Shown one piece after another: positions 526 through 62,926 of a DNA stretch of 64,000 nucleotides; positions within the stretch are counted from its first letter, which is position 1, and the number at the start of each line of letters is the position of its first letter. The notes beneath the pieces were generated by a model, which was not told the origin of the DNA, did not search any database, and worked only from the letters and a program-made list of their open reading frames with translations. Origin of the DNA: Schmidtea nova (taxonomy: Eukaryota); contig CM097883.1 in assembly GCA_044892505.1 (NCBI GenBank), forward strand, positions 275,342,001-275,406,000, in the 5' to 3' direction. The position numbers and the translations under genes were made by a program.

Positions 526-1008
526 ATGGAATCGACTGAACAGATTTTAGAACGAATCGAGTTGTTTTTCGAGTTTAAAAATCACCCATTGGAGGTATTG
601 AGCGAGAAACTTGAGCGGGTAAACGAAATAAGAGACGAATTATTATTGAAACCTAGGCCTCAATCTGAGAATTTAGTTGTGATTGTTGGAATCGCAGGAG
701 TAGCAAATGATATTTCGCTAGAGACGATTTACGAATTTCAACGATTACGACTGAAAAATCCGATCTTCAACGTTAAAATACGAAAATGGATCGATAAAAT
801 CGATAAAATTATGGACGAGTTAGAAAAATTGATAAATCAACAAGTCGAGACGTTCGAAAAATGTTATATTTGTCGCCAAAAAGAAGCGAATGTTTTGTTC
901 ATGCCATGTGGGCATTTGTGCTACTGCCAGGAGTGTTCTGGTGAATTGAGTAGATGTGTAATCTGTAAACAAACAGTAAATGAAAAAGTTGTTGTATATT
1001 ATTCGTAA
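526..1008 (+). CDS. 160-aa protein with C-terminal C3HC4 RING finger (IAP/MDM2-type); single exon in this window
   Basis: CYIC...VLFMPCGHLCYCQECSGELSRCVICKQ has RING cysteine/histidine spacing and the PCGH motif; 'attttag' acceptor abuts the ATG. Confidence 0.8.
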   Translation: MESTEQILERIELFFEFKNHPLEVLSEKLERVNEIRDELLLKPRPQSENLVVIVGIAGVANDISLETIYEFQRLRLKNPIFNVKIRKWIDKIDKIMDELEKLINQQVETFEKCYICRQKEANVLFMPCGHLCYCQECSGELSRCVICKQTVNEKVVVYYS

Positions 1009-13754: not shown

Positions 13755-16700
13755 TGAAGTCTAACGCACAAGATAACTTTATTTAAATACTCAAAAAATT
13801 CGCAATCACGTTTTTAACATTATTTAAACAAATATAATAATCAATTATCACATTCCCCCGTGATGTCAACATCATCGTCAAGCGCGTCGTCGCCGAGAAT
13901 ATAATCTTGTAGGTACGCTGGTACGTATCGGCTTCTTTGTTGCCTATCGGTTGACATTTCAGTCGTAAGTTGACCATTATTTTCAATAGTTCGCTCTTCT
14001 CCTGTCGTGTCAGTCGGCTCAACCTGTCTAATGTCAGCTATGGACCTTAGTACACCATCCACCTCGATATTCGTGGACGAGTGAACGTCGGTACCCTCCG
14101 TCCAAACACTTGTACATCTTGCATTCGGCGGCTTATAGAATACCTTGTCTCCTCTAGCATAACGACTCAGAATTTCGTCATTCCCGATTTCCACTTCTTG
14201 CATATCCTTCCAGCCGTATGTAAATAGTTGTCTCGAAGGCGCTTCAAAGTCGGCACTGGAGCTCATGTTGAACCAGTAAACCATGTCAAAGGGGTCCCCT
14301 TCCGTCCATGCCGCCATTCTCTTCACGATGGTCGGTAAGCGCATCGAAAAATACGACCAACACCCCACTTTGCATATAATTCCTATAATTGACGAGACCT
14401 AAATCAACCACCATTATCCATGAACAACTGGCACGGAGGTCCACGTTCTCTGAATATTTGTTCACAGATTCTAGTAATGGTCACAGTATCCTCATTACAC
14501 ATCTCTTTCCATATTGCGAATCTACTCGGTCCGCAGTCGATACACGTCAAATAACGCTTATTCCGGTAGTGAGTCACGCCTAATGCCAATCTGATCCAAT
14601 TACACTTCACCTCCAAATTTTCAATTTTCCATCTTACAGGTGCCGGATCTATCGTTCGACACTTAATTCAGTTTGATATCACACCTGTACCGCTCCACGA
14701 GATACGTTAGAAAGCAACTTCCTGACGAAAAACAGAGTTCGATCCACTCCGAAGTGACGCGCCTCATGGCACTTCCTTATCCTGTCGGATATCGATATAG
14801 TAGAACAACTTACTTGTTTAACTCATGTAAGCCAAGCTTTCTTGACTCTAGTTGACCCTTGTTTTTCTCGGTCGGGACAAACTCCACGGCTATCTTTAAG
14901 TTGTATGCCAGTTGGAGTTCGTGAACAATTTGTAGACGCCTACGAATTAGCATCTCGGAAGATCCATGAGTTTTTACTCGATGACTATCTGTCAGTAATG
15001 ATCTTAGCCAATTTTGGACAGTCGCAGAATCTGATTTCACGATTATCGACGACAGATCCCACTTAATCGCGAAGTTAATTCCTTTAATTACAGCATCGAG
15101 TTCATCCACGTTTATATGCGCTGCGTTGTCTGTCTTTATCAGCCAAGCGGCATCCTCCACTATCTCTCTGTTGATTTCGAGACAAACTCCAAGAGCCAGA
15201 TTGCTTGCATTACACCATACAACTCCATCTTTTGTCGTTGAAACATGCCAAACTATACGAACTGGATCATCTTTCTTAACGAGTTCGATAATTTCAGCTA
15301 TTATGATGGAAGCATAATTTCCAATTGTCTCTTCCCACGTTGAACCGGTACTCTGGCGCTTAACATAACTGCATGCAATCGGCAACCAGCCAGCAACTGG
15401 ATAGTGACCGACCAGCTGACCGATATTCGAGTACTGGTCGTATTTTTCCTTTGTTAGACTGATTAACTGCCATTAATGGTAGCATACCATCAGAGTTTCC
15501 TTTATAAGGCGTTAATCAACTGTTTCAAATCCATTCTGTGATTTCCGCGTCGAATCCATTGCGTAGATCTGGCTTAATCTATATTTAGCACATGTATTAC
15601 CAAGTTCAGGAGGTTGATTTTTCCATTTCCAGCTCACTGTCAAATTGCCGGAAAGGAAATCGGCTTGAAAGTCTTCATCTCTAATTTCCAGAGACTTGGT
15701 ATGTCGTTCGTCTGCCCTCAAGAAATCGCACTTTCTCCCCACGGCACTGGCCAAAGGAAACGATACCCCTTGCCTTGATATATTCACCCCACCGAGCATT
15801 CCTATAACATACATTCCCAAAATTATACCAAAATCTCTTGGAAGGTTTTCCATCACGAGACAGGCTACTCGCAGACTTGTCTTTTTAATAACAATGTTTA
15901 TCTCGATGGTTCCCAAACTCTTGGCCAATGATCCATCAGCCACCAGCATACTGTCGCTCTTCCCATACGGTCCGCTGTCCAACAAGGACAAAATAATAGA
16001 TTGGGTAAAACCTGAATCTATTAAAGCTTTGTAAGTCCTTCCGTTGACAGTTTCAACGACAGTCTGCAGCGTCATTATTACTTTTCCGGAGTGAACACTG
16101 GCGCACGTATTACTCCAATAGCGTTTCCCGTCTGTTTCTTTGGGCAAGATCGCGCGAGGTGGGCTTTATCACCACATATCCAGCATTATTTGTTTTTTCG
16201 GAAACATGTATCTTAATTGTGCCCTTTTTTCCACAAAACAAACACATTTGGTCATTAGGATTGGTAATTCTTCTTTCTTTTACTCCCAGCATACAACTTT
16301 GCTGAGAAACTGCATTACTCAACATAGCTCGAGCTATCTGTACGACCGCATCCATTGCCATTGTTTCAATAATCGGAATAGCCTATAGTGACTGATATAG
16401 ACGCTGGAAGTCCAGTAACGAACAAACATATAATAACGGCATCATTGACCCCAGATAACTTACCCAGAGAGGTTAGTTCGGCCGGATAAACATCGACAGG
16501 CTCGTTCCTCCATGATCGATTCTTCAATTTCTCAAAAGCAATAAACATCGACATAGAGAAGGCTCTCTTCATTGCTGCTTCGGTCTAGATGAAACTTCCT
16601 CTGACTTCATCGCTGAGATGCTGATACACCGCATATGAGTCTCCTTTCATCAGTATCGGCAGAAACATCTCCAGGTTCTCAATCTTTTGCATGAAAGCTA

Positions 16701-45764: not shown

Positions 45765-46332
45765 TTTTAAAAAAAATGTTATTTCCTTAGTAATTTTTGA
45801 AAACGATAAAAATTTGGATTTTTAGTTTGGATTTTTAGTTTGGATTTTTAAAAGTTAGCTCTAAAAAACAATTACAGAATTAAACAACACGTTGACAATT
45901 ATTTCAAGGTCAATCTGTTGAATTCGTTTAACAAATTTATTATATTTTAAGAAATACATAACAAACCAAGATTTAGTTATAATTTTAAATATATTTTTTA
46001 ATTTTAATAATTTTTCAACTATTTTGAAACTTGTTTAAACCTAAGATAAAGAAATGTTTAATAAAATTTCATTATCTTATGAAATTTTTAAGAAGAAACA
46101 TTTACGGTAACTAAATGTGATTTTGTCCTTACGATTTCTTAAGTGTAGATAAAAAGAGAATGTTTACAGACATCAAGGTTTTAGGTTTAATAAAGTAAAT
46201 ATTAATCATAATTACACTAAGTAGTGACTGGTCACACCCACTTTTAAAAATATTTTTAAAAATAATTAAATAATATTTAAAATAATTAATTGGGAGCTTG
46301 ATTGCTATGAGAGATTGTGGGGCGAGCCTGAA

Positions 46333-46374
46333 GCCGTTAGACCATCTTATCGAAATCTATATAAATATTATATG
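46333..46374 (+). other. Planarian spliced-leader (SL) exon-like sequence, 42 nt, inside the Gypsy LTR
   Basis: GCCGTTAGACCATCTTATCGAAATCTATATAAATATTATATG versus recalled Schmidtea SL1 GCCGTTAGACGGTCTTATCGAAATCTATATAAATCTTATATG (39/42, same length, ends in ATG); not followed by a GT donor. Confidence 0.85.
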
Positions 46375-46543
46375 GACATTGTAACCAAATCAATTAAATA
46401 ATTATTATAAATACCATATGTATTTATAATAATAATATCATTAAACAAAATTTTGTTTTAATATGTAATATAAATAAATATTTACAAATTCGAATATTGT
46501 CTTATTTCTAATATCTTATGATGAACTCCGAAAAAGACAACAT

Positions 46544-46555
46544 TGGTGTCAGAAG
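46544..46555 (+). promoter_or_regulatory. Primer-binding site complementary to a tRNA-Leu 3' end
   Basis: TGGTGTCAGAAG one base after the LTR-terminal CA. Confidence 0.75.
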
Positions 46556-48645
46556 CGTGGCTTATGAAAGTAGTCACATGCAGATGAAGATGCCGATTTT
46601 CTTCGACAACGTGGTAGCGTGGTTCCAGCAGGTTGACGCTGCACTCGAGCTTGCATCAAAAAAATGAAAAGTCAAAATATTTTCATTTGCTCACCAGTTT
46701 ACCACCACGAATCCTCGAAGAATATTCGGATCTATTGGACCCACACGTCAAACTGCCGTATTCGACGTTAAAAGACGCAATCATCGAGGGAGTCAAAAGG
46801 ATCGATAACTGAGGCTGCTAACAAATTACTCCAGAAACAAGAGCTTGGTGATCGAAAACCAAGTCAGCTGCTCAGGGAACTCAAGCGAAATTACAAATTA
46901 ATGGAACCGAATGGAAACCCACAAACAAGCCAGATCCTGAGATTTCAATTTATAAATTACATGCCAATTCACATACAACACTTGTTAGTGTCAAAAGAAG
47001 CAGACATTGATGAGCTGGCAAACATCGCAAACGTGCATATGAGTATCGAAAATCATGTTATATCTCAGGTGGAAAATCTACCACCAACCGAACGCCAGTA
47101 TCAACAGCAAATAGAAAATCTCTAAAATCAAATCAATGCCATAAAATCAAATAACAAATCAAATCAATACAACAAGCTGTCAACATAAAACCCAATATGC
47201 TATTTCCACAGAAGATTTGGAAAAGATGCCCGAAAATGCGAACAGCTATGTCACTGGAATAAGTCATATTCGGGAAAAGGTCAAGGATCTCTTTGATGTC
47301 GACGACAGAGATCCTGAACAACTCTCAGCAGTCGACAAAAATCCACGCCATATTCACTGTGCCAGTTCTTCAGAGCAACAAAACACACAATTTTCTTGTG
47401 GATTCTGGAGCGGATGTCAGCGTCATTCCAGCAAATGCATTTACGCCTGATCTTAGAGACGGGCCTATTAAACTTGTTTCAGCCAACAACTGCAACATCA
47501 AAACGTATGGTTCAAAGGTGCTACACTTCAGGATTGCAGGCATAGAGCAAAACTTTTAATGGAGCTTTGTGGTGGCTGATGTAACCCACCCGATTCTAGG
47601 AGCAGATTTTCTATCCAAACATAAATTTGTAATTGACTGCAGAAATGCTGAGATTTACATCACCGAAAATACGACAGAAGCCAGAGCAACAACTGCTCCT
47701 GACGAAATCAACTCAATTCTTCTTGAGCACGCATTGGAGATAGAGACAGCATGTCTACCGATTGCACAATCAGCTAAGACGGATCGATTCGACCCTGTGG
47801 AGATTACAGACTTTTGAATGCAGCAACAAAGTCAGACAGATACCCATTACCCAGGAAAACCGATATGCTCCATCAACTGGGAAGGAGTCAAATATTCTCA
47901 ACCATCGACTTAGAGAAAGCGTATCATCAAATCCCCATCTCAGTAAATGACATACCAAAAACGGCTATAATCACGCCGTTTGGGTTATATGAATATATAA
48001 AAATGCCATTTGGATTAAAAAATGCATCGCAGACCTTTCAACGGTTCATGGACAAACTTCTACGCCCGTACAGAGAATTTACCAGAGCATACATAGATGA
48101 TATCATCATCTTCTCCAAGTCTATAGAAGAACATCGTAATCACTTATCAAGCATTCGGAAAGTCGTGGAAGACGCAAATTTGTCCATCAATGAGAATAAG
48201 TGCTGCACCACTCAAACAGAAGTAAAATTCCTTGGATTTAACATTTCAGGTTCAGGAATATCACCACAATCAGACAAGATTCAAGCAATTTCATTATGCC
48301 CACGCCCGAACAACAAGAAATATATTCTTACTATTATTGACAGGCATACACAGTGATCCAGAACTTCATCGATATTTGTGCAACTCTAACAAATCTGGGT
48401 ATGGAGAATTATTTGATTTATCGCCACCTATCTATCTCTAATAACGATTATTGGATTTATAACTTTAAGAATTTTTTCGATGGATTTAAAAGAAAGAGTG
48501 ATTTGAATCTTTGTTTAGCTGAACTATTTTTGTTTGTTTTTTTTGAGTTTGTTTCGTTTTCGACTAGGAAGTGGAAACTTTTTGAATTTTTTGAAATTCG
48601 TTGAGTAATTTTTGATATTTGCTTTATAATTTAATAAATTAAAAA

Positions 48646-49232
48646 ATGTCATTGGGCTCGAGTGTTTTTGATCGTTATATGACTATTTTTTCACACGAAG
48701 GCAGATTATTTCAAGTCGCATATGCATTTAAAGCGATTGCGTTAGATGGATTACTTTCTGTTGGTGATCGAGGTAATGATTGTGGCGTAGTTGTTACACA
48801 AAGAAAATTCCCAGATAAAATGATTGAAAAGAGTTCAGCTACAAGATTATTTAATATAACTGAAAGTACAGGTTGCGTTATGACCGGTATGATTTCTGAT
48901 TGCAGATCGCAAGTCTGCCGTGCACAAATGGAAGCTGCACGATTTAAATGCAAAATTAGATGCGAAATGTCCTGTGACATGATTTGTCGATGTATTGCCG
49001 ATATTAATCAATTGTACACTCAATCAGCTGAAATGAGGCTATTAGGCTGTTCAATGATCACATTGTCATATGATAAGGAGATGGATAAGCCACTGTTATT
49101 CAAAACCGATCCAAGTGGATTTGTAGCTGGTCATCGAGCTGTTGCGGTCGGTGGAAAACAGTTGGAAGCTAAAAGCTATTTGGAAAAGAAGCTTCGTAAA
49201 AATACAGAATTTTCAATTGATGAGGAAATAAA
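48646..49232 (+). pseudogene. PSMA6: Intronless, 3'-truncated copy of proteasome subunit alpha type-6
   Basis: FDRYMTIFSHEGRLFQVAYAFKA (conserved form [23 protein letters not shown]), GCVMTGMISDCRSQV, YTQSAEMRLLGCSM, KTDPSG; similarity stops near aa 195 and the ORF runs into unrelated sequence to 49374. Confidence 0.88.
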
Positions 49233-49629
49233 TCGCTGCTGGACGCGGCGAACCAGTGACTTTGAATTACATTTCATTTTAATTTGTAGATATTATATGC
49301 AAGCACATTTATTTTTCAAAATTATAATAATGTATTCTATCATTTATAATTTCTTCGCAAAAAAAATTAAATAAAAAAATTTAACTTTTGAAGATGCCAT
49401 TGAACTTTCATTTAAATAACTCCCGCGTAAAACACCAAATTAGGATTCTAAAACACAATACTTTACTTATTTTGAGCAAAAACTAAATCCAACAGGTTTT
49501 TTTTATTGAAGCAGTAACATAGAATGTAGAGAACGCGTAAGAAGTTAATTTAAATTTTGTAATAAGAAACACCAATTAAAAAACTTAATAACAAAACCAA
49601 CAAAAAAATAAATAAAAGAGCTCACCGAG

Positions 49630-49866
49630 TGGTGGGTTGTTGACAGCAAATATGACCTTGACTTTGCTATGGCTCATCATCAACAACTCATCACATAAAA
49701 CATTATTTGACCATCTTGTTACCCGCTACAATATAACGTTGGTAATGGAACAAATGGTTGGACATCCACAAACAATGAGCGTCGAAAAAACTTGAAACTA
49801 CGATTTGCCGAATGTCGCGGTGGGTTCAAGGCTGACCGATAGAAGCTTCTTTGCCAATTCTGTCCC
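49630..49866 (+). ncRNA. Copy C (most diverged) of the ~234-nt structured repeat
   Basis: End-to-end similarity; compensatory changes GACAU/AUGUC and UUGG/CCAA relative to the other copies. Confidence 0.6.
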
Positions 49867-50009: not shown

Positions 50010-52338
50010 CACCTAATTCTGTTTTTACGCGATAGGTACGTTCCTCGAAAATTCGCGTAAAAGAAATTCGCGTAAAAAAGATATATTATCTATATAAAAG
50101 TATGGGATTGGTTCCGAATTTTCAAAATCAACCAAAATAATGTGATTAAAATATACAAATTTATATTTTTAGGTGTTTTAAAAATTTTATATTTATTTAA
50201 AGATATATTTATAAGTATATTATTAAAGGACAAACGAAAAAAATGATACAAAATGCTAATTTAACAAAATAAATTCATTATTTAACAAAATATCACAAAA
50301 AAATTCATTTTAATAAAACAAAAAATGGCAAAATATATTATAAAACATATTTTTTAATTGCTGTCACTTCCTGATGATATACGCATTCGTTTATGTGAGA
50401 CTTGAACGTCACTGTCATCACTAGAAATATTTGCAACTTCATTTTCATGTTCAAGTGGTGCTGATGTTTCAGTTGTTTTGAGTTTAGTCACAAATTCAGT
50501 TATCAATCGTTGTGTTCTCGGTTTGATAATGCTGTTATATAATTCAAGATAATTACCCATTAATAATTTCACGTCACGTTCAAATTTCCGAGCTCTTTCC
50601 TCAATATGATCATGCTTGCTAAAATGATCGCTCAATTAAGCTGCTAGTTGCAGTCCTTCTTTGATTTGATCTGGGGTGAGGGTAGGAATCTCTACGTCAT
50701 CTTCACTTATTTCTTGGGCATCAGGCGTTTCAAGCGCAAAACCATTGATTTTATCAGTGCTTGGTCCCTTATCCACTAATAATTCTTCGATATCTGCAGA
50801 CGAGAGATCATCAAAACCTTCTCCGCCTACTTCATGAGCTAAGGCTATAATATTGGTATACTCGACTGTATTAGAAGGCATTGGATCTTTATTTTTGACG
50901 CATTCTGGTCAAAGGGATTTCCAACATGCGTTTAAAGTTGATGGTTTTAGTTCTGATAGTGCTAATCCAGCATGTTTGATGCAGTCATTAATAGAAAATT
51001 TCTTCCACGCGTCCATGACTTTTAAATTTTCATCATTCATTAATTTATCTAAAATGTATCGGAATGTTTGCTTTACATAATAGGTCTTAAAGGTTGCTAC
51101 GATTCCTTGATCCAGTGGTTGTATCAACGAAGTCGTATTAGGCGGCAAAAAACAAAATTCGACATTTGGGTGCTCCATATGGGGATGACCTGGTGCGTTG
51201 TCTATAATGAACAGAAACTTGAATTCGAGACCTTAATCGCTCATATAGCGCCAAACTTCTGGTACAAAATATTTTAAGAATCATTCCTTAAAAGTTTCAG
51301 TAGTTACCCAGGCTTTTTTATTTGCTGTCCAGTGGACTGGCAATCTACTAAAATTTACACCTTTCATTGACCGTGGTTTTAGTGCTCTATTTACAAGTAA
51401 AGGTTTCAGTATTCGATCTCCTGAAGCGTTAGAACAAAATAAAAAGGTCACGCGATCCTTGGCTACTTTAAACTCACTTGCAATTTTCTGGGATTTGGCT
51501 ACGTATGTTCTACTCTGCATTCTTTTCCAGAAAAGACCTGTTTCATCTGCATTCCATACCTGATCCGAAGTGAAGCCACGTTCTTCAATTATTTTAGCCA
51601 CTTTTTTGTGGAAATGCTTTAGCTACATCCTCATCTGCAGATGGAATTTTACCCCTAATTTTTATATTATGATGTGCGTGCCTTTGCAGATAACCTGTCA
51701 TTCAACCTGTACTTGAAGAAAATTCAAATTTTTTATCTTTCTGGCCTGATGTTTGTGTTTCCATTTCTTTCATCTGCTTATAAATTCGTAATGCCATCTG
51801 CTTTATGCCATTTCCGTCAACAGGTATCCGTTTTTGTGAGCAATCCTCCATCCATATTACAAGAGCCTTCTCCATTTTCTCTTTTACATTGTCTCTTGTG
51901 TATGATGTTGTATGAGTACTCATATTTGTTCCAGCAATCACAGATTTTCTGATAGCTTCTTCATTTTTTTTATAGTTCTTATGGTTGATTCTTTTAAATT
52001 AAAATATTTTCCTACAGAAGTGGCACTTTCTCCAGTGGCTAGTCTATCCAAAATTTTGATTTTAATTTCCAAAGAAATAGCTTTTCTATTCGTTTGTTTT
52101 TTAGCTGACATTATTAATTGTAATGAGGTTCCTATAAAAAATTTATTTGCATGTAATAAATGAATGGACTTAAAATTATAAATTACCTTTAACTTTAATT
52201 GAATTTATATTTGAATTTTTTTTGCTAAAAATGAAATTTTTTGCATCGCGTTAAATCAAATCAAATTGCGTAAAAACAGAACGAAATAATTTTGTTGAAT
52301 CACGTTAATTCAAATTCGCATAAAAACAGAATTAGGTA
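50010..52338 (-). mobile_element. Near full-length Tigger/pogo transposon (2329 bp), transposase frameshifted
   Basis: TIR ACCTAATTCTGTTTTTA(C/T)GCG at both ends, TA-flanked; EKALVIWMED, QVWNADETGLFWKRM, DRVTFLFCSNASG, LPPNTTSLIQPLDQG. Confidence 0.93.
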
Positions 52339-53366: not shown

Positions 53367-53592
53367 TGGTGGGTTGTTGACCGTCAATATGACCTTGACG
53401 TTATTATGGCTCACATCAACAACTCAACATACAAAACATTAGTTTAACCATCTTGTTGCCCGTCACAAAGTAATGCAACAAATGGGTGGATATTCGCAAT
53501 CAGTAAGCGTCAAAAAATTCGAAACTATGATTGACCGAATATCTAAGTGGGTTCAAGGGCTACCGACAGAAGGTTTCGCGCCCATTTCTCCC
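53367..53592 (+). ncRNA. Copy D of the ~234-nt structured repeat (short deletion in domain 2)
   Basis: End-to-end similarity to copies A-C. Confidence 0.6.
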
Positions 53593-58099: not shown

Positions 58100-60403
58100 T
58101 CTATTTGACTTGAAGTTTGTTTTTTAATGTTAATTTTATTTAATGTAATGTTAATAAATTTCAATTTTGAATCGTTTTTAAAGGTTTTGATTTTATGTTA
58201 ATAAAGTGTATGTGATATTAATTTAATACAAAATTTTTAATATACTTTTTACTTCAGTTTAGCTGGCTTTCCTCAACGAATATTGCGAATTCGTGCAAAT
58301 ACCAATTTTCACAATCTTCTCAAATGCTGATAAAATTCATTTGGAATAATTTACACTTTTTACGATATTCACTGTAAATGTATATATTCACAAATAAAAT
58401 AATATAAGCTACACAAAATACTAAATGTTTTTATGTCTTTAATTAAATACAAGTATAGATTGTTTGTTAAAAAATCATTGGTTATTTTGTCTACTTAAAA
58501 CTAATTATAACTTTAGAATGGTTTTATTTAGTATTTTTTAAATTAATTTAAATTTTTGAATAAATTAATTTTTTCTTAACCCAATTTTTGGACGAAAAAA
58601 ATTTGGACTATGTGATTTTTGGACAAAATTTTTTTTGACAATGATTTTGGATGAAAAAATTTGGAAGAAAAACATTTGGACGAATTGATAGAGAATCATG
58701 ATGAATAGATTAAATTAATGCAAAATAGAACAATAATAAAATACCTGGCAAGGAACAATAGGGGGAGATGATCGCGATGACTCCCTGTCTATCATCAGAA
58801 TGGTCCTTACGTTTGATGGGTTACTAGCTCGGTGAGAGTCACAGAATATTGATATCAGCAACAGATTCAGAATATATGGTCTTTTATAATTTTTTTTCTT
58901 GATGATGTTTCGGACTTTCTTGCTCGACAGTACATTTTCGAATAATTTTCGTGTATGGGTTCGCCTTTAGAAGTGTTTCAACTTGGAAGTCTCAAAATTC
59001 TGAAAAAGTTGAATTCTATTAGTGTTGTTTACATTAACGCGTTTAAAGAAACTGTTCTAGAACGAATTTTCTATTTTTCCAAAATTAAATTTTTTTACTA
59101 ATTTATTTAAGTTCGCTAAATTTTTATTTAAATCTATTTTCTTTGATATTTTATAAATCTTTAAGATAAAAATCAAAACATTTTTTCTGAAAATGTGCAA
59201 ATCTTTCCTAATTTATAATTTTATTTTGCAATTAATATTTTTATGTTATATTTATTTTTTCAACGTGTATGCTTGATAATTAGTCAGTTGTCAAAAAGCG
59301 CCGAATAGAGTCTTAGAAAAGGTTGTTTGGGGAATGATGTTCGGTTGAGAATAATTTTGGAAATTAGTTTTGTATTTGCTGTCGTTTTGTGGAACAAAAT
59401 AATGCAAAATTGTCAAACGGCGAAATTAAATTTGTTTCTTTGAGAATTAGGATTTTAAAGAGTGAAAATAACGGCGTCCATTTTAAGAAGTTATTCAATA
59501 TATGAGTGATTTGGTTAATAAATTGATTGTGAAGATGATGAATGGGAAAACAAAAATTTAGCAGCCACCAATATGTGTGATATTTGGTCGTTATATCGAT
59601 TTTAATTGTTTTCTTGTAAAATTTAGATGTAACACTCACAACTTTCCTGAGCATTAGCAGTCACGGAGACGCAGCTCATCTTTTACATACATATTCAACC
59701 ACTTGATACAGTGTCAACGTTGCCAAACGAGAAGGATAAAAATTTTTCATGTTTGAGTATTGAAGGTTAGGTGTGAAGCAAGAGTTCATATTATAGTAAT
59801 ATTAAAAATAAGTAATTTATATATACATGAATCTGATTGGCTACACAGACGATGACGAGTATAAATAAGCAAACAAAATTAGTCATAGTCATAAAATGCA
59901 AAATCTTTTCAGTAATGAAAAATTGAGTCTAATTAAAGATTTAGTGAAAATGAAACCAGTTAAGAACAAAATCAAATCAAACCAAACCAAACATGATTTC
60001 AGACCGGTTCAAATGTTTCAGGATTATCTAATGTGTTTCTTAGTAAATGAAATCCCATTCAAGTTCTCATATCCAGTAAAGCTGTCGACTTCGCAATATT
60101 CCAACTTAATTGGTCAACTTTTTTTAATTATTATTTATTTATTTATTATTAATTATTTAAANNNNNNNNNNNNNNNNNNNNNNNNNNNNNNNNNNNNNNN
60201 NNNNNNNNNNNNNNNNNNNNNNNNNNNNNNNNNNNNNNNNNNNNNNNNNNNNNNNNNNNNNNNNNNNNNNNNNNNNNNNNNNNNNNNNNNNNNNNNNNNN
60301 NNNNNNNNNNNNNNNNNNNNNNNNNNCCTTTGATCTTTTTTTATTATTATTATTAATAATTCTCATAATGACTATAGATCAAAATTTTTTTTTATAAACA
60401 ATA

Positions 60404-60436
60404 ACACAATATTTCGGCACAGCCTTTAGCAAGTGT
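60404..60436 (-). ncRNA. Minimal hammerhead, U3-A8 family, with A6C change (probably inactive)
   Basis: ACAC-UUGCUAA-A-GGC(UGU)GCC-GAAA-UAU-U-GUGU. Confidence 0.55.
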
Positions 60437-61267: not shown

Positions 61268-61869
61268 ATAACAATAACGAACACACAACATATCTAAGAT
61301 TACCTTTCCTTAATGACACTACAGCCAACAAAATCACCAACATTTTTAATCAAACAGATTTGCCTATCCACATCCGTCAACGTTCATAACCTCCGCACCG
61401 TTAAAATCACAACTCCGAAAGCCACCAATTTCCAACATCTCCAAACATAAATGTCTTTGCCGTTCCACAACCCGATGCTTTTGCTTTTCCAAAAATATAG
61501 TATATAAACTTTCTTGCCAAAAATGTGACGCTACTTTCATAGGAGAAACACATAGAACTTTTCGCACCCGACTTAATCAACACACTAAAATCAAAACCAG
61601 TAATTATTACGAACACTGGGAGAAAGTACATAAAACAACTCCATCTATAGAAGAAACAAAATGCCAGATTCTACAAGAGGGATTCAAAAATTCATTACAA
61701 AGATTAGCTTCCGAGACTTTTTTCATAAAAAAATTCAAACCGTCCATCAACATTCAATTCGCACAAAAAAATTAAAATAAATTTTTTCATCCAATAAAAT
61801 CATTATAAAATATTAAAAAAATAATTAAGGCTACTATTTAGGATTAAGTAAATATAACGATAGAAATAC

Positions 61870-61902
61870 ACACTTGCTAAAGGCTGTGCCGAAATATTGT
61901 GT
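61870..61902 (+). ncRNA. Minimal hammerhead, U3-A8 family, with A6C change
   Basis: Identical to the 60404-60436 copy, in opposite orientation. Confidence 0.55.
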
Positions 61903-61954
61903 TATTGTTTATAAAAAAAAATTTTGATCTATAGTCATTATGAGAATTATTGAT

Positions 61955-62010
<56 letters not shown>

Positions 62011-62014
<4 letters not shown>

Positions 62015-62157
62015 ATCAATAATTCTCATAATGACTATAGATCAAAATTTTTTTTTATAAACAATAACACAATTGATAAAGGCTGTGCCGAAATATTGTG
62101 TTATTGTTTATAAAAAAAAATTTTGATCTATAGTCATTATGAGAATTATTGATAATA
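62011..62157 (+). repeat. Perfect 62-bp-arm hairpin whose loop is a U3-A8 hammerhead core
   Basis: 62011-62072 pairs with 62096-62157; loop TTGATAAAGGCTGTGCCGAAATA. Confidence 0.85.
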
Positions 62158-62926
62158 ATAATAAAAAAAGATCAAAGGNNNNNNNNNNNNNNNNNNNNNN
62201 NNNNNNNNNNNNNNNNNNNNNNNNNNNNNNNNNNNNNNNNNNNNNNNNNNNNNNNNNNNNNNNNNNNNNNNNNNNNNNNNNNNNNNNNNNNNNNNNNNNN
62301 NNNNNNNNNNNNNNNNNNNNNNNNNNNNNNNNNNNNNNNNNTCCTAATTAACTATTTTTTCATGATGTTTCATAAATTGGGGTTCTTATGTTAGAATTTT
62401 AATTAAAACTCATTATTTAAATCTAATATTTAAAATTTTTAAAATTTGCCGAGGCCCTGACAACAGTATCTAAGTGTTTCCTTAATTTTTATAATTTTAT
62501 GATCTAAAGCTATCAAATTTTATTTTTTTTAAATTATTTAAATTTATAATTCTAATTTAAAATTTCTGTAAAAGTTAAATTAAACTTCGTAAAATTATGC
62601 AAAAATTAACTATTATTATTATTACACTATTATTTTAGCATCTTGTTTAAAACGAAATTTAAAAAGAAATCTATTTATTAGCAACTCTCAGGCTGATTGG
62701 TTGAATTTGAAAAGGTTAGGAATTAACGATTCTAACATTTTATTTTTAGGTTACTGGATTCCCACAACTCGTTCCCTACAGATTCCTAAGAATTTGTACC
62801 GTTCTATGCTCTCTTGCAATTCCCCTTATCTCAGTTAAGCAAATCATTCATATTTTCAGGTGGAAGATTTTTCAGGCCAATATCCTCCAGTTTTTGAGTT
62901 TAGCGTTTCAGGCATGACAAGTAAAT

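What the first reader, a model, noticed from the sequence alone, without database searches (positions are those of the whole stretch)
46316..46560. Spliced-leader exon built into a Gypsy LTR
Seen: a 42-nt block (46333-46374) starts 17 nt after TGTGGGG, inside a 227-bp segment ending in CA that is followed by a tRNA-Leu PBS and gag-pro-RT. It ends in ATG followed by GACATT, not a GT donor, and no clear Sm site follows. Knowledge: planarians trans-splice a 42-nt ATG-ending SL onto mRNAs; the block matches the recalled SL1 at 39/42. Inference: the SL exon entered the LTR at the RNA level. One route is trans-splicing of the element RNA, copying of the SL into minus-strand strong-stop DNA, and fixation at strand transfer. 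If this is family-wide, the retrotransposon would carry its own leader in a nearly U3-less LTR and could mimic host trans-spliced mRNAs. That would be an unusual link between trans-splicing and retrotransposition.
Basis: partly seen in the sequence, partly recalled or inferred. Interest (0 to 1): 0.9.

Follow-up and report, generated by a model that had tools for sequence, protein, structure and literature searches.

The report
Spliced-leader copy beside dead Gypsy fragment
A 42-base copy of a flatworm spliced-leader exon really does sit just upstream of the primer-binding site of a decayed, truncated Gypsy-type retrotransposon, probably left by a trans-spliced element RNA copied back into DNA; this has been reported in flatworms, and here it is one dead copy.

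Summary
The 42-nt block at 46333-46374 ends in ATG, is followed by GA rather than GT, and is unique in the window. It lies 168 nt upstream of a primer-binding site (PBS) whose first 12 nt are complementary to the 3' end of a tRNA-Leu(CAA). Downstream lie decayed gag-like, protease and reverse-transcriptase (RT) sequences.

I could not obtain the published planarian spliced-leader (SL) letters, so "39/42 to SL1" is unverified. Independent evidence exists: two metatranscriptome contigs encoding different proteins start with one shared 42-nt ATG-ending leader. The block matches it at 35 of 42 aligned columns, and 24 of the first 26.

The LTR reading is not established. The element stops inside RT. 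It has no RNase H, no integrase and no 3' LTR, and the window holds no second copy of the 227-bp segment. Family-wide presence could not be tested because no close relative of the element was found in any collection searched.

Most likely the SL was captured at the RNA level and this copy is dead. SL-bearing loci next to LTR and LINE elements in flatworms (PMC12582326) and SL trans-splicing of a Gypsy mRNA (Cer1, PMC3315495) are already published. Interest is moderate to low.

The parts
46290..46332 (+). 43-nt stretch of higher G+C directly upstream of the SL block. Its origin is unknown: a remnant of U3, an SL-gene promoter, or flanking DNA.
   Evidence: GC is 0.51, against 0.17 for 46200-46289. 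No other copy in the window.
46333..46374 (+). Copy of a spliced-leader exon, 42 nt, ending in ATG.
   Evidence: Unique in the window. 35/42 aligned columns, and 24 of the first 26 nt, match the 42-nt leader shared by contigs L004 and L005. blastn-short gives 36.2 bits against a best of 32.2 in 100 shuffles.
46375..46542 (+). 168-nt very A+T-rich spacer between the SL block and the PBS, ending in ACA. It is the putative R/U5 or 5' leader. It contains an A/T palindrome at about 46401-46434 and an AATAAA at 46473.
   Evidence: GC 0.17. Predicted hairpin and fold z-score of -2.9. No GT at the junction and no exact Sm motif.
46544..46561 (+). Primer-binding site of tRNA-Leu type.
   Evidence: The first 12 nt are the reverse complement of the 3' end, CCA included, of tRNA-Leu-CAA-2-1 printed in PMC10359600. 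The string is unique in the window.
46578..47260 (+). gag-like region, broken. It is read in three frames, so it has several frameshifts and stops. The bounds are approximate.
   Evidence: DUF7041 match, E about 1e-5, 26.4 bits, below the 28-bit cut-off.
47206..48353 (+). pol fragment holding the protease and the N-terminal two thirds of reverse transcriptase. It is broken (1 frameshift, 1-2 in-frame stops) and truncated at its 3' side.
   Evidence: PF00078 at 118.6 bits; RVP weak. Homology to relatives ends near 48347, at about residue 400 of roughly 980-residue relatives that continue with RNase H and integrase.
48354..48645 (+). Unassigned sequence after the truncation point. It has no poly(A), no SL and no LTR copy.
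48646..49233 (+). Neighbour, not part of the element: an uninterrupted coding stretch like proteasome subunit alpha-6.
   Evidence: PF00227 and PF10584. Best hits are flatworm alpha-6 subunits at 60-66% identity. It covers residues 1-197 of 247.

Best explanation
The block is a DNA copy of a mature flatworm spliced-leader exon. It sits 168 nt upstream of the tRNA-Leu primer-binding site of a dead, 3'-truncated Ty3/Gypsy-like retrotransposon fragment.

Most likely it arrived through RNA. A transcript containing the element's 5' leader was SL trans-spliced at an acceptor upstream of the PBS. That spliced RNA was then reverse-transcribed and integrated, and the copy has since decayed.

Shown here: the SL homology, whose two edges coincide with the edges of the mature exon; the absence of a donor and an Sm motif; the PBS; the gag-like, protease and RT sequences; and the truncation.

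Inferred, not shown: the trans-splicing event, the route of reverse transcription and integration, and whether 46316-46542 was ever a complete LTR repeated at the 3' end. On present evidence this is a one-off relic, not a working device.
For: Two contigs encoding different proteins (a thiolase and an unrelated 465-residue protein) begin with one identical 42-nt leader ending in ATG and share only 43 nt in all. The window block matches that leader at 24 of the first 26 nt and at the terminal TATG. The similarity begins within 1 nt of the leader's first base and ends at its ATG. It exceeds all 100 shuffles.

The base pair after the ATG is GA, not GT. No exact RAU4-7GR motif follows. No Rfam family matches.

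The PBS is tRNA-Leu type, and gag-like, protease and RT sequences lie downstream.

[quoted passage not shown] They showed only partial leaders, and the authors proposed the same origin (PMC12582326). The Gypsy/Ty3 element Cer1 makes an SL1 trans-spliced mRNA (PMC3315495).
Against: No poly(A) tract and no target-site duplication frame the fragment.

The 43 nt directly upstream of the SL have 51% G+C in a 17% background. A cDNA ending at the cap does not explain this.

The 168-nt spacer has the composition of the surrounding intergenic DNA (17% G+C), not of the element's interior (41%).

Under the established strong-stop transfer model (my knowledge, not tested), a foreign 5' leader without a match at the RNA's 3' end should hinder normal LTR replication. 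An irregular route must therefore be assumed.

Only one copy is available. The host's own SL letters and SL RNA genes were not available.
Confidence: 0.55

Rival explanations
1. The SL exon is a fixed part of the LTR of a whole Gypsy family. Both LTRs carry it, so every transcript has a built-in host-like leader, or the block supplies promoter signals.
For: The segment has TGT...ACA ends, and a PBS follows 1 nt after the ACA. A TATA-like TATATAA lies inside the block at 46358 and an AATAAA lies at 46473. So a 227-bp unit could in principle hold TATA, R and U5. By my inference, a non-homologous first strand transfer could place the leader in both LTRs in one cycle.
Against: There is no second LTR, no solo LTR and no other copy in 64 kb. 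The element is truncated and broken. Seventeen nt of 'U3' cannot hold a promoter. TATA-like and AATAAA strings are commonplace at 17-29% G+C: there are four TATA-like hits in 320 nt. No close relative turned up in the protein collections.
Confidence: 0.12
2. DNA-level juxtaposition. A decayed SL RNA gene or pseudogene (promoter plus exon) lies next to a 5'-truncated Gypsy fragment through insertion or deletion. The GT donor was lost by a point change.
For: The 43-nt G+C-richer stretch directly upstream of the exon could be a proximal promoter. A single substitution would turn GT into the observed GA. Hairpins are predicted downstream. GTAA occurs 7 nt after the ATG.
Against: The 168 nt after the exon are 17% G+C with no exact Sm motif, unlike the structured 3' part of flatworm SL RNAs described in PMC12582326. 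The PBS would be left with at most about 90 nt of LTR. By my rough estimate, the chance that an SL gene lies within 200 nt of a given transposon fragment is very small compared with the tens of SL-tagged mobile-element loci per genome reported in PMC12582326.
Confidence: 0.2
3. Chance resemblance of A+T-rich DNA to a spliced leader.
For: The 3' third of the block is low-complexity A/T, and it is the part that differs from the reference leader.
Against: The 22-base pattern taken from the G+C-containing 5' part matched only two contigs in the whole metagenome collection. Both matches are at the start of an mRNA-like contig. There were none in the genome collection. The window match beats all shuffles.
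Confidence: 0.02

Closest known systems
SL-bearing loci associated with LTR and LINE elements in parasitic flatworms (PMC12582326, Mol Biol Evol 2025)
   Same: A leader sequence without the rest of an SL RNA, lying within 500 bp of a retrotransposon, in the same phylum. The proposed origin is the same: integration of retrotransposon transcripts that had received the SL by trans-splicing.
   Different: Those loci come from cestodes and trematodes. They were used as a filter and are not described in detail, and their leaders are called partial. Here the whole 42-nt exon is present and its position relative to the PBS is known.
Cer1, a Gypsy/Ty3 element of C. elegans with an SL1 trans-spliced 2.4-kb mRNA (PMC3315495)
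   Same: A Ty3/Gypsy element whose RNA is a substrate for SL trans-splicing.
   Different: In Cer1 the SL is seen on RNA only, and the full-length 8-kb RNA is not trans-spliced. Here the SL is in the DNA.
Relict spliced leaders at the 5' end of retrogenes in dinoflagellates (cited in PMC12582326; PMC12014239)
   Same: An SL fixed in genomic DNA as a mark of reverse transcription of a trans-spliced RNA.
   Different: Those are host-gene retrocopies in protists, often with tandem relict SLs. Here it is a retrotransposon fragment in a flatworm with a single SL.
Retrotransposons that insert specifically into SL RNA genes (SLACS, CZAR and CRE in trypanosomatids; NeSL-1 in nematodes); recalled from my own knowledge, not tested
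   Same: Physical neighbourhood of an SL exon and a retroelement.
   Different: Those are non-LTR elements that cut a fixed site inside a working SL gene. Here the element is of LTR type, the junction is at the exon's end, and no SL gene body is recognisable.

Membership tests
Flatworm spliced-leader exon | The same leader of about 40 nt occurs at the 5' end of unrelated mRNAs | tested here: met
   Met for the homologue. L004 and L005 share 42 nt (43 with one coincident base) and then encode different proteins. The window block aligns to it at 35/42 columns.
Flatworm spliced-leader exon | 3'-terminal ATG, stated for all reported flatworm SLs in PMC12582326 | tested here: met
   The block ends in ATG at 46372-46374.
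Flatworm spliced-leader exon | Identity to the host's own published SL1-SL4 | not testable with these tools
No held paper or supplement prints the letters.
SL RNA gene | GT splice donor directly after the exon | tested here: not met
   GA follows the ATG. The nearest GTAA is 7 nt further on.
SL RNA gene | Sm-like site RAU4-7GR downstream of the donor | tested here: not met
   No exact match in 46280-46600.
SL RNA gene | A hairpin holding the donor site and a hairpin before the Sm site | tested here: inconclusive
   Hairpins are predicted, but they are A/T palindromes in 17% G+C DNA.
SL RNA gene | No mobile element within 500 bp (filter used in PMC12582326) | tested here: not met
   The PBS and gag-like region start 170 nt downstream.
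LTR of a Ty3/Gypsy retrotransposon | Two direct copies flanking the internal region | tested here: not met
   No second copy of 46250-46600 in the window. The 3' half of the element is absent.
LTR of a Ty3/Gypsy retrotransposon | TG...CA termini | tested here: inconclusive
   TGT at 46316 and ACA at 46540-46542. The 5' edge has no other support.
LTR of a Ty3/Gypsy retrotransposon | tRNA primer-binding site next to the 3' end of the 5' LTR | tested here: met
   12 nt complementary to the tRNA-Leu(CAA) 3' end, 1 nt after ACA.
LTR of a Ty3/Gypsy retrotransposon | Target-site duplication and polypurine tract | not testable with these tools
   The 3' end of the element is missing from the window.
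Ty3/Gypsy element | Order gag, protease, RT, RNase H, integrase | tested here: inconclusive
   The gag-like region, protease and RT are present in that order. RNase H and integrase are absent here. They follow RT in the nearest relatives.
SL-tagged retrocopy | SL joined to downstream sequence exactly at the exon end | tested here: met
   Similarity to the reference leader ends at the ATG.
SL-tagged retrocopy | Poly(A) tail and flanking duplication | tested here: not met
   Neither was found at 48330-49460.

The most novel reading that the evidence does not exclude
A planarian Gypsy family whose LTRs have permanently taken in the host spliced-leader exon. Every copy would then carry it at the same offset, and the block would serve as a built-in leader or as the LTR's TATA region.
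Probability: 0.1. Interest if true: 0.7.

Novelty: new member of a known kind. Interest (0 to 1): 0.35.

Why it matters
If the RNA route is right, this locus is a physical record that a Gypsy-type RNA in a free-living flatworm was a substrate for SL trans-splicing and was still copied back into the genome. The precise anatomy is informative: a whole exon, 168 nt upstream of the PBS. It says where in the element's leader the acceptor lay.

It also matters practically. Such relics inflate counts of SL RNA genes and must be filtered out, as PMC12582326 already does. Only if the block proved to be family-wide would it bear on how retroelements borrow host mRNA features.

Tried and rejected
1. Published planarian SL letters. 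Zayas 2005 and Rossi 2014 are not held. Full-text searches with fragments of the block, as DNA and as RNA, found nothing relevant. Supplements of three papers held nothing.

2. Rfam. No match at gathering or E-value thresholds. Only insignificant snoRNA and lncRNA hits appeared.

3. Other copies of the element. RT searches in both protein collections gave relatives of at most 61% identity. Three loci fetched for them (L001-L003, unknown hosts) do not contain the block. A repeat scan of L001 found only a 10-bp tandem array.

4. Exact 22-nt pattern from the middle of the block in metagenome contigs: no match. The pattern with two free positions gave the two useful contigs. The same pattern in the GTDB genome collection gave nothing.

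5. Naming the organism behind L004/L005. The thiolase is 65-70% identical to those of many animal phyla, so this was not informative. Related transcripts L009 and L010 carry no leader. L008 likewise.

6. Identifying the source of the window. The proteasome-like ORF is not on record.

7. Target-site duplication or poly(A) around a putative retrocopy: none.

I did not search the viral contig collection, because that could fetch viruses of animals.

Full report
**What is there.**
- TGTGGGG starts at 46316.
- A 42-nt block runs from 46333 to 46374, ends in ATG and is followed by GACATT.
- The segment 46316-46542 ends in ACA.
- After one T comes a TGG-initiated string at 46544.

The block is unique in the 64-kb window at up to 3 mismatches, with no match in 100 shuffles. 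It is still unique at up to 10 substitutions. The runs of N in the window lie far from the finding and were left alone.

**Is the block a spliced leader?** I could not obtain the published planarian SL sequences. The two key papers are not held. No paper or supplement in the library prints a string that overlaps the block.

I tested the claim another way. A 22-base pattern was taken from the window's own letters in the 5' part of the block, with two positions left free.
- It matched only two contigs in the whole metagenome collection, both at the very start of the contig.
- The two contigs (L004 read on its minus strand, L005) begin with one identical 42-nt leader that ends in ATG. They share 43 nt and then diverge.
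- One goes on to encode a thiolase and the other an unrelated 465-residue protein.

An identical leader on two different mRNAs is the signature of a trans-spliced leader. The terminal ATG is the feature that PMC12582326 reports for all flatworm SLs.

The window block aligns to this leader at 35 of 42 columns: 24 of the first 26 nt and the final TATG. The A/T-rich third in between differs. The match at 46333-46358 scores 36.2 bits (E 2.6e-5), above the best of 100 shuffled windows at 32.2 bits. The similarity starts within one base of the leader's first base (the leader has one extra 5' G where the window has A) and stops at its ATG. The pattern is absent from the bacterial and archaeal genome collection. 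The organism behind the two contigs could not be named.

**The surroundings.**
- Positions 46544-46555 are the reverse complement of the last 12 nt, CCA included, of tRNA-Leu-CAA-2-1 as printed in PMC10359600.
- Downstream on the same strand lie three coding remnants: a gag-like region (DUF7041, 26.4 bits, just below its 28-bit cut-off); a weak aspartyl-protease match with a DSGA motif; and a strong reverse-transcriptase match (PF00078, 118.6 bits).
- The nearest relatives carry RT, RNase H and integrase in that order. That is the Ty3/Gypsy arrangement.
- All of these genes are broken. The gag-like part is read in three frames. The protease-RT part has one frameshift and one or two in-frame stops.
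- Homology to relatives ends near 48347, at about residue 400 of roughly 980-residue proteins that continue with RNase H and integrase. Nothing corresponding to these follows.
- The next recognisable feature is an uninterrupted stretch like proteasome subunit alpha-6 at 48646-49233. Its best hits are flatworms at 60-66% identity. With the low G+C of the window, this fits a flatworm host.

**Is 46316-46542 an LTR?** Its 3' edge is well placed by the PBS. Its 5' edge rests only on a TGT.
- There is no second copy of this segment, nor of any part of the element, in the window. The 3' half of the element is missing. Pairing, target-site duplication and a polypurine tract therefore cannot be checked.
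- Composition is uneven.

| Segment | G+C |
|---|---|
| Upstream DNA, 46200-46289 | 17% |
| 43 nt directly before the block, 46290-46332 | 51% |
| SL block, 46333-46374 | 29% |
| 168-nt spacer, 46375-46542 | 17% |
| Element interior, 46543-48350 | 41% |

- A TATA-like string lies inside the block (46358) and an AATAAA lies at 46473. Such strings are common in DNA this A+T-rich.

**Is it an SL RNA gene?** The defining features were tested.
- There is no GT after the exon, though GTAA occurs 7 nt later.
- There is no exact Sm motif.
- There is no Rfam match.
- A mobile element lies within 170 nt.
- Predicted hairpins exist but are A/T palindromes.

A decayed gene copy is not excluded, because one substitution separates GA from GT and the 43-nt G+C-richer stretch upstream is unexplained.

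**Most likely mechanism.** The edges of similarity coincide with those of the mature exon, and no SL gene body is recognisable. The simplest account is therefore that an RNA containing the element's 5' leader was trans-spliced about 168 nt upstream of the PBS. It was then copied into DNA and integrated.

The route is inferred. Normal strong-stop transfer needs matching R sequences (established model, not tested here). Either an irregular transfer or integration by another pathway must therefore be assumed. I found no poly(A) and no flanking duplication that would point to a LINE-type retrocopy.

The sequence does not exclude it, but nothing available here supports it.

**What is known already.**
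[quoted passage not shown] They showed only partial leader sequence. The authors proposed integration of retrotransposon transcripts that had received the SL.
- Cer1, a Gypsy/Ty3 element of C. elegans, makes an SL1 trans-spliced mRNA.
- Relict SLs in dinoflagellate retrogenes are the classic case of the same principle.

This locus is therefore a new member of a known kind. It is notable for the complete exon and for its clear position relative to the PBS.

**Verdict.** Interest is 0.35.

**Slips and limits.**
- None of those letters went into a tool call or into this report as evidence. The tRNA letters used here come from PMC10359600.
- My script printed stop-to-stop segments of the broken element with coordinates and translations. 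That amounts to showing where the breaks are. I noticed this afterwards, used the output only to choose unbroken pieces as queries, built nothing from it, and give only counts here.
- Loci L001-L003 are RT relatives from metagenome assemblies of unknown hosts.

Noticed in passing
window 48646-49233 (+): An uninterrupted coding stretch like proteasome subunit alpha-6, covering residues 1-197 of 247, starts about 300 nt after the truncated RT. The C-terminal 50 residues were not found anywhere in the window. It could be a truncated retrocopy or a long first exon. An A-rich tract lies at about 49365-49380.
   Followed up: partly
window 50357-51998 (-) and 29363-29818 (+): Broken remains of pogo/Tc5-type DNA transposases (DDE_1, HTH_Tnp_Tc5).
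   Followed up: partly
window 13841-16147 (-): A second, different retroelement remnant in the G+C-richest part of the window (0.44). It has aspartyl protease, RNase H-like (RVT_3) and a weak integrase-like match at 14329-14616. It carries no SL block.
   Followed up: partly
window 49630-49859 and 53367-53586 (+): Two direct repeats about 230 nt long, 75-87% identical and 3.7 kb apart, bracket the transposase remnant.
   Followed up: no
window 60345-60410, 61868-62160: Nearly identical short repeats (98%) in direct and inverted arrangement around (AT)n microsatellites, resembling a miniature inverted-repeat element.
   Followed up: no
window 46401-46434 (+): An almost perfect A/T palindrome inside the 168-nt spacer. 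The 118-nt stretch from the SL block onward folds better than all 200 shuffles (z = -2.9).
   Followed up: partly
L004 1524-1565 (-) and L005 1-42 (+): An unidentified animal in JGI metatranscriptome 3300030569 uses a 42-nt ATG-ending spliced leader closely related to the window block. In L004 the leader's own ATG is in frame with the coding sequence.
   Followed up: partly
window 526-1005 (+): ORF with a C3HC4 RING finger, probably a host exon.
   Followed up: no
window 46142-46218 (-): Weak C/D-box snoRNA-like matches (E above 1), far below the gathering scores. Probably chance.
   Followed up: no
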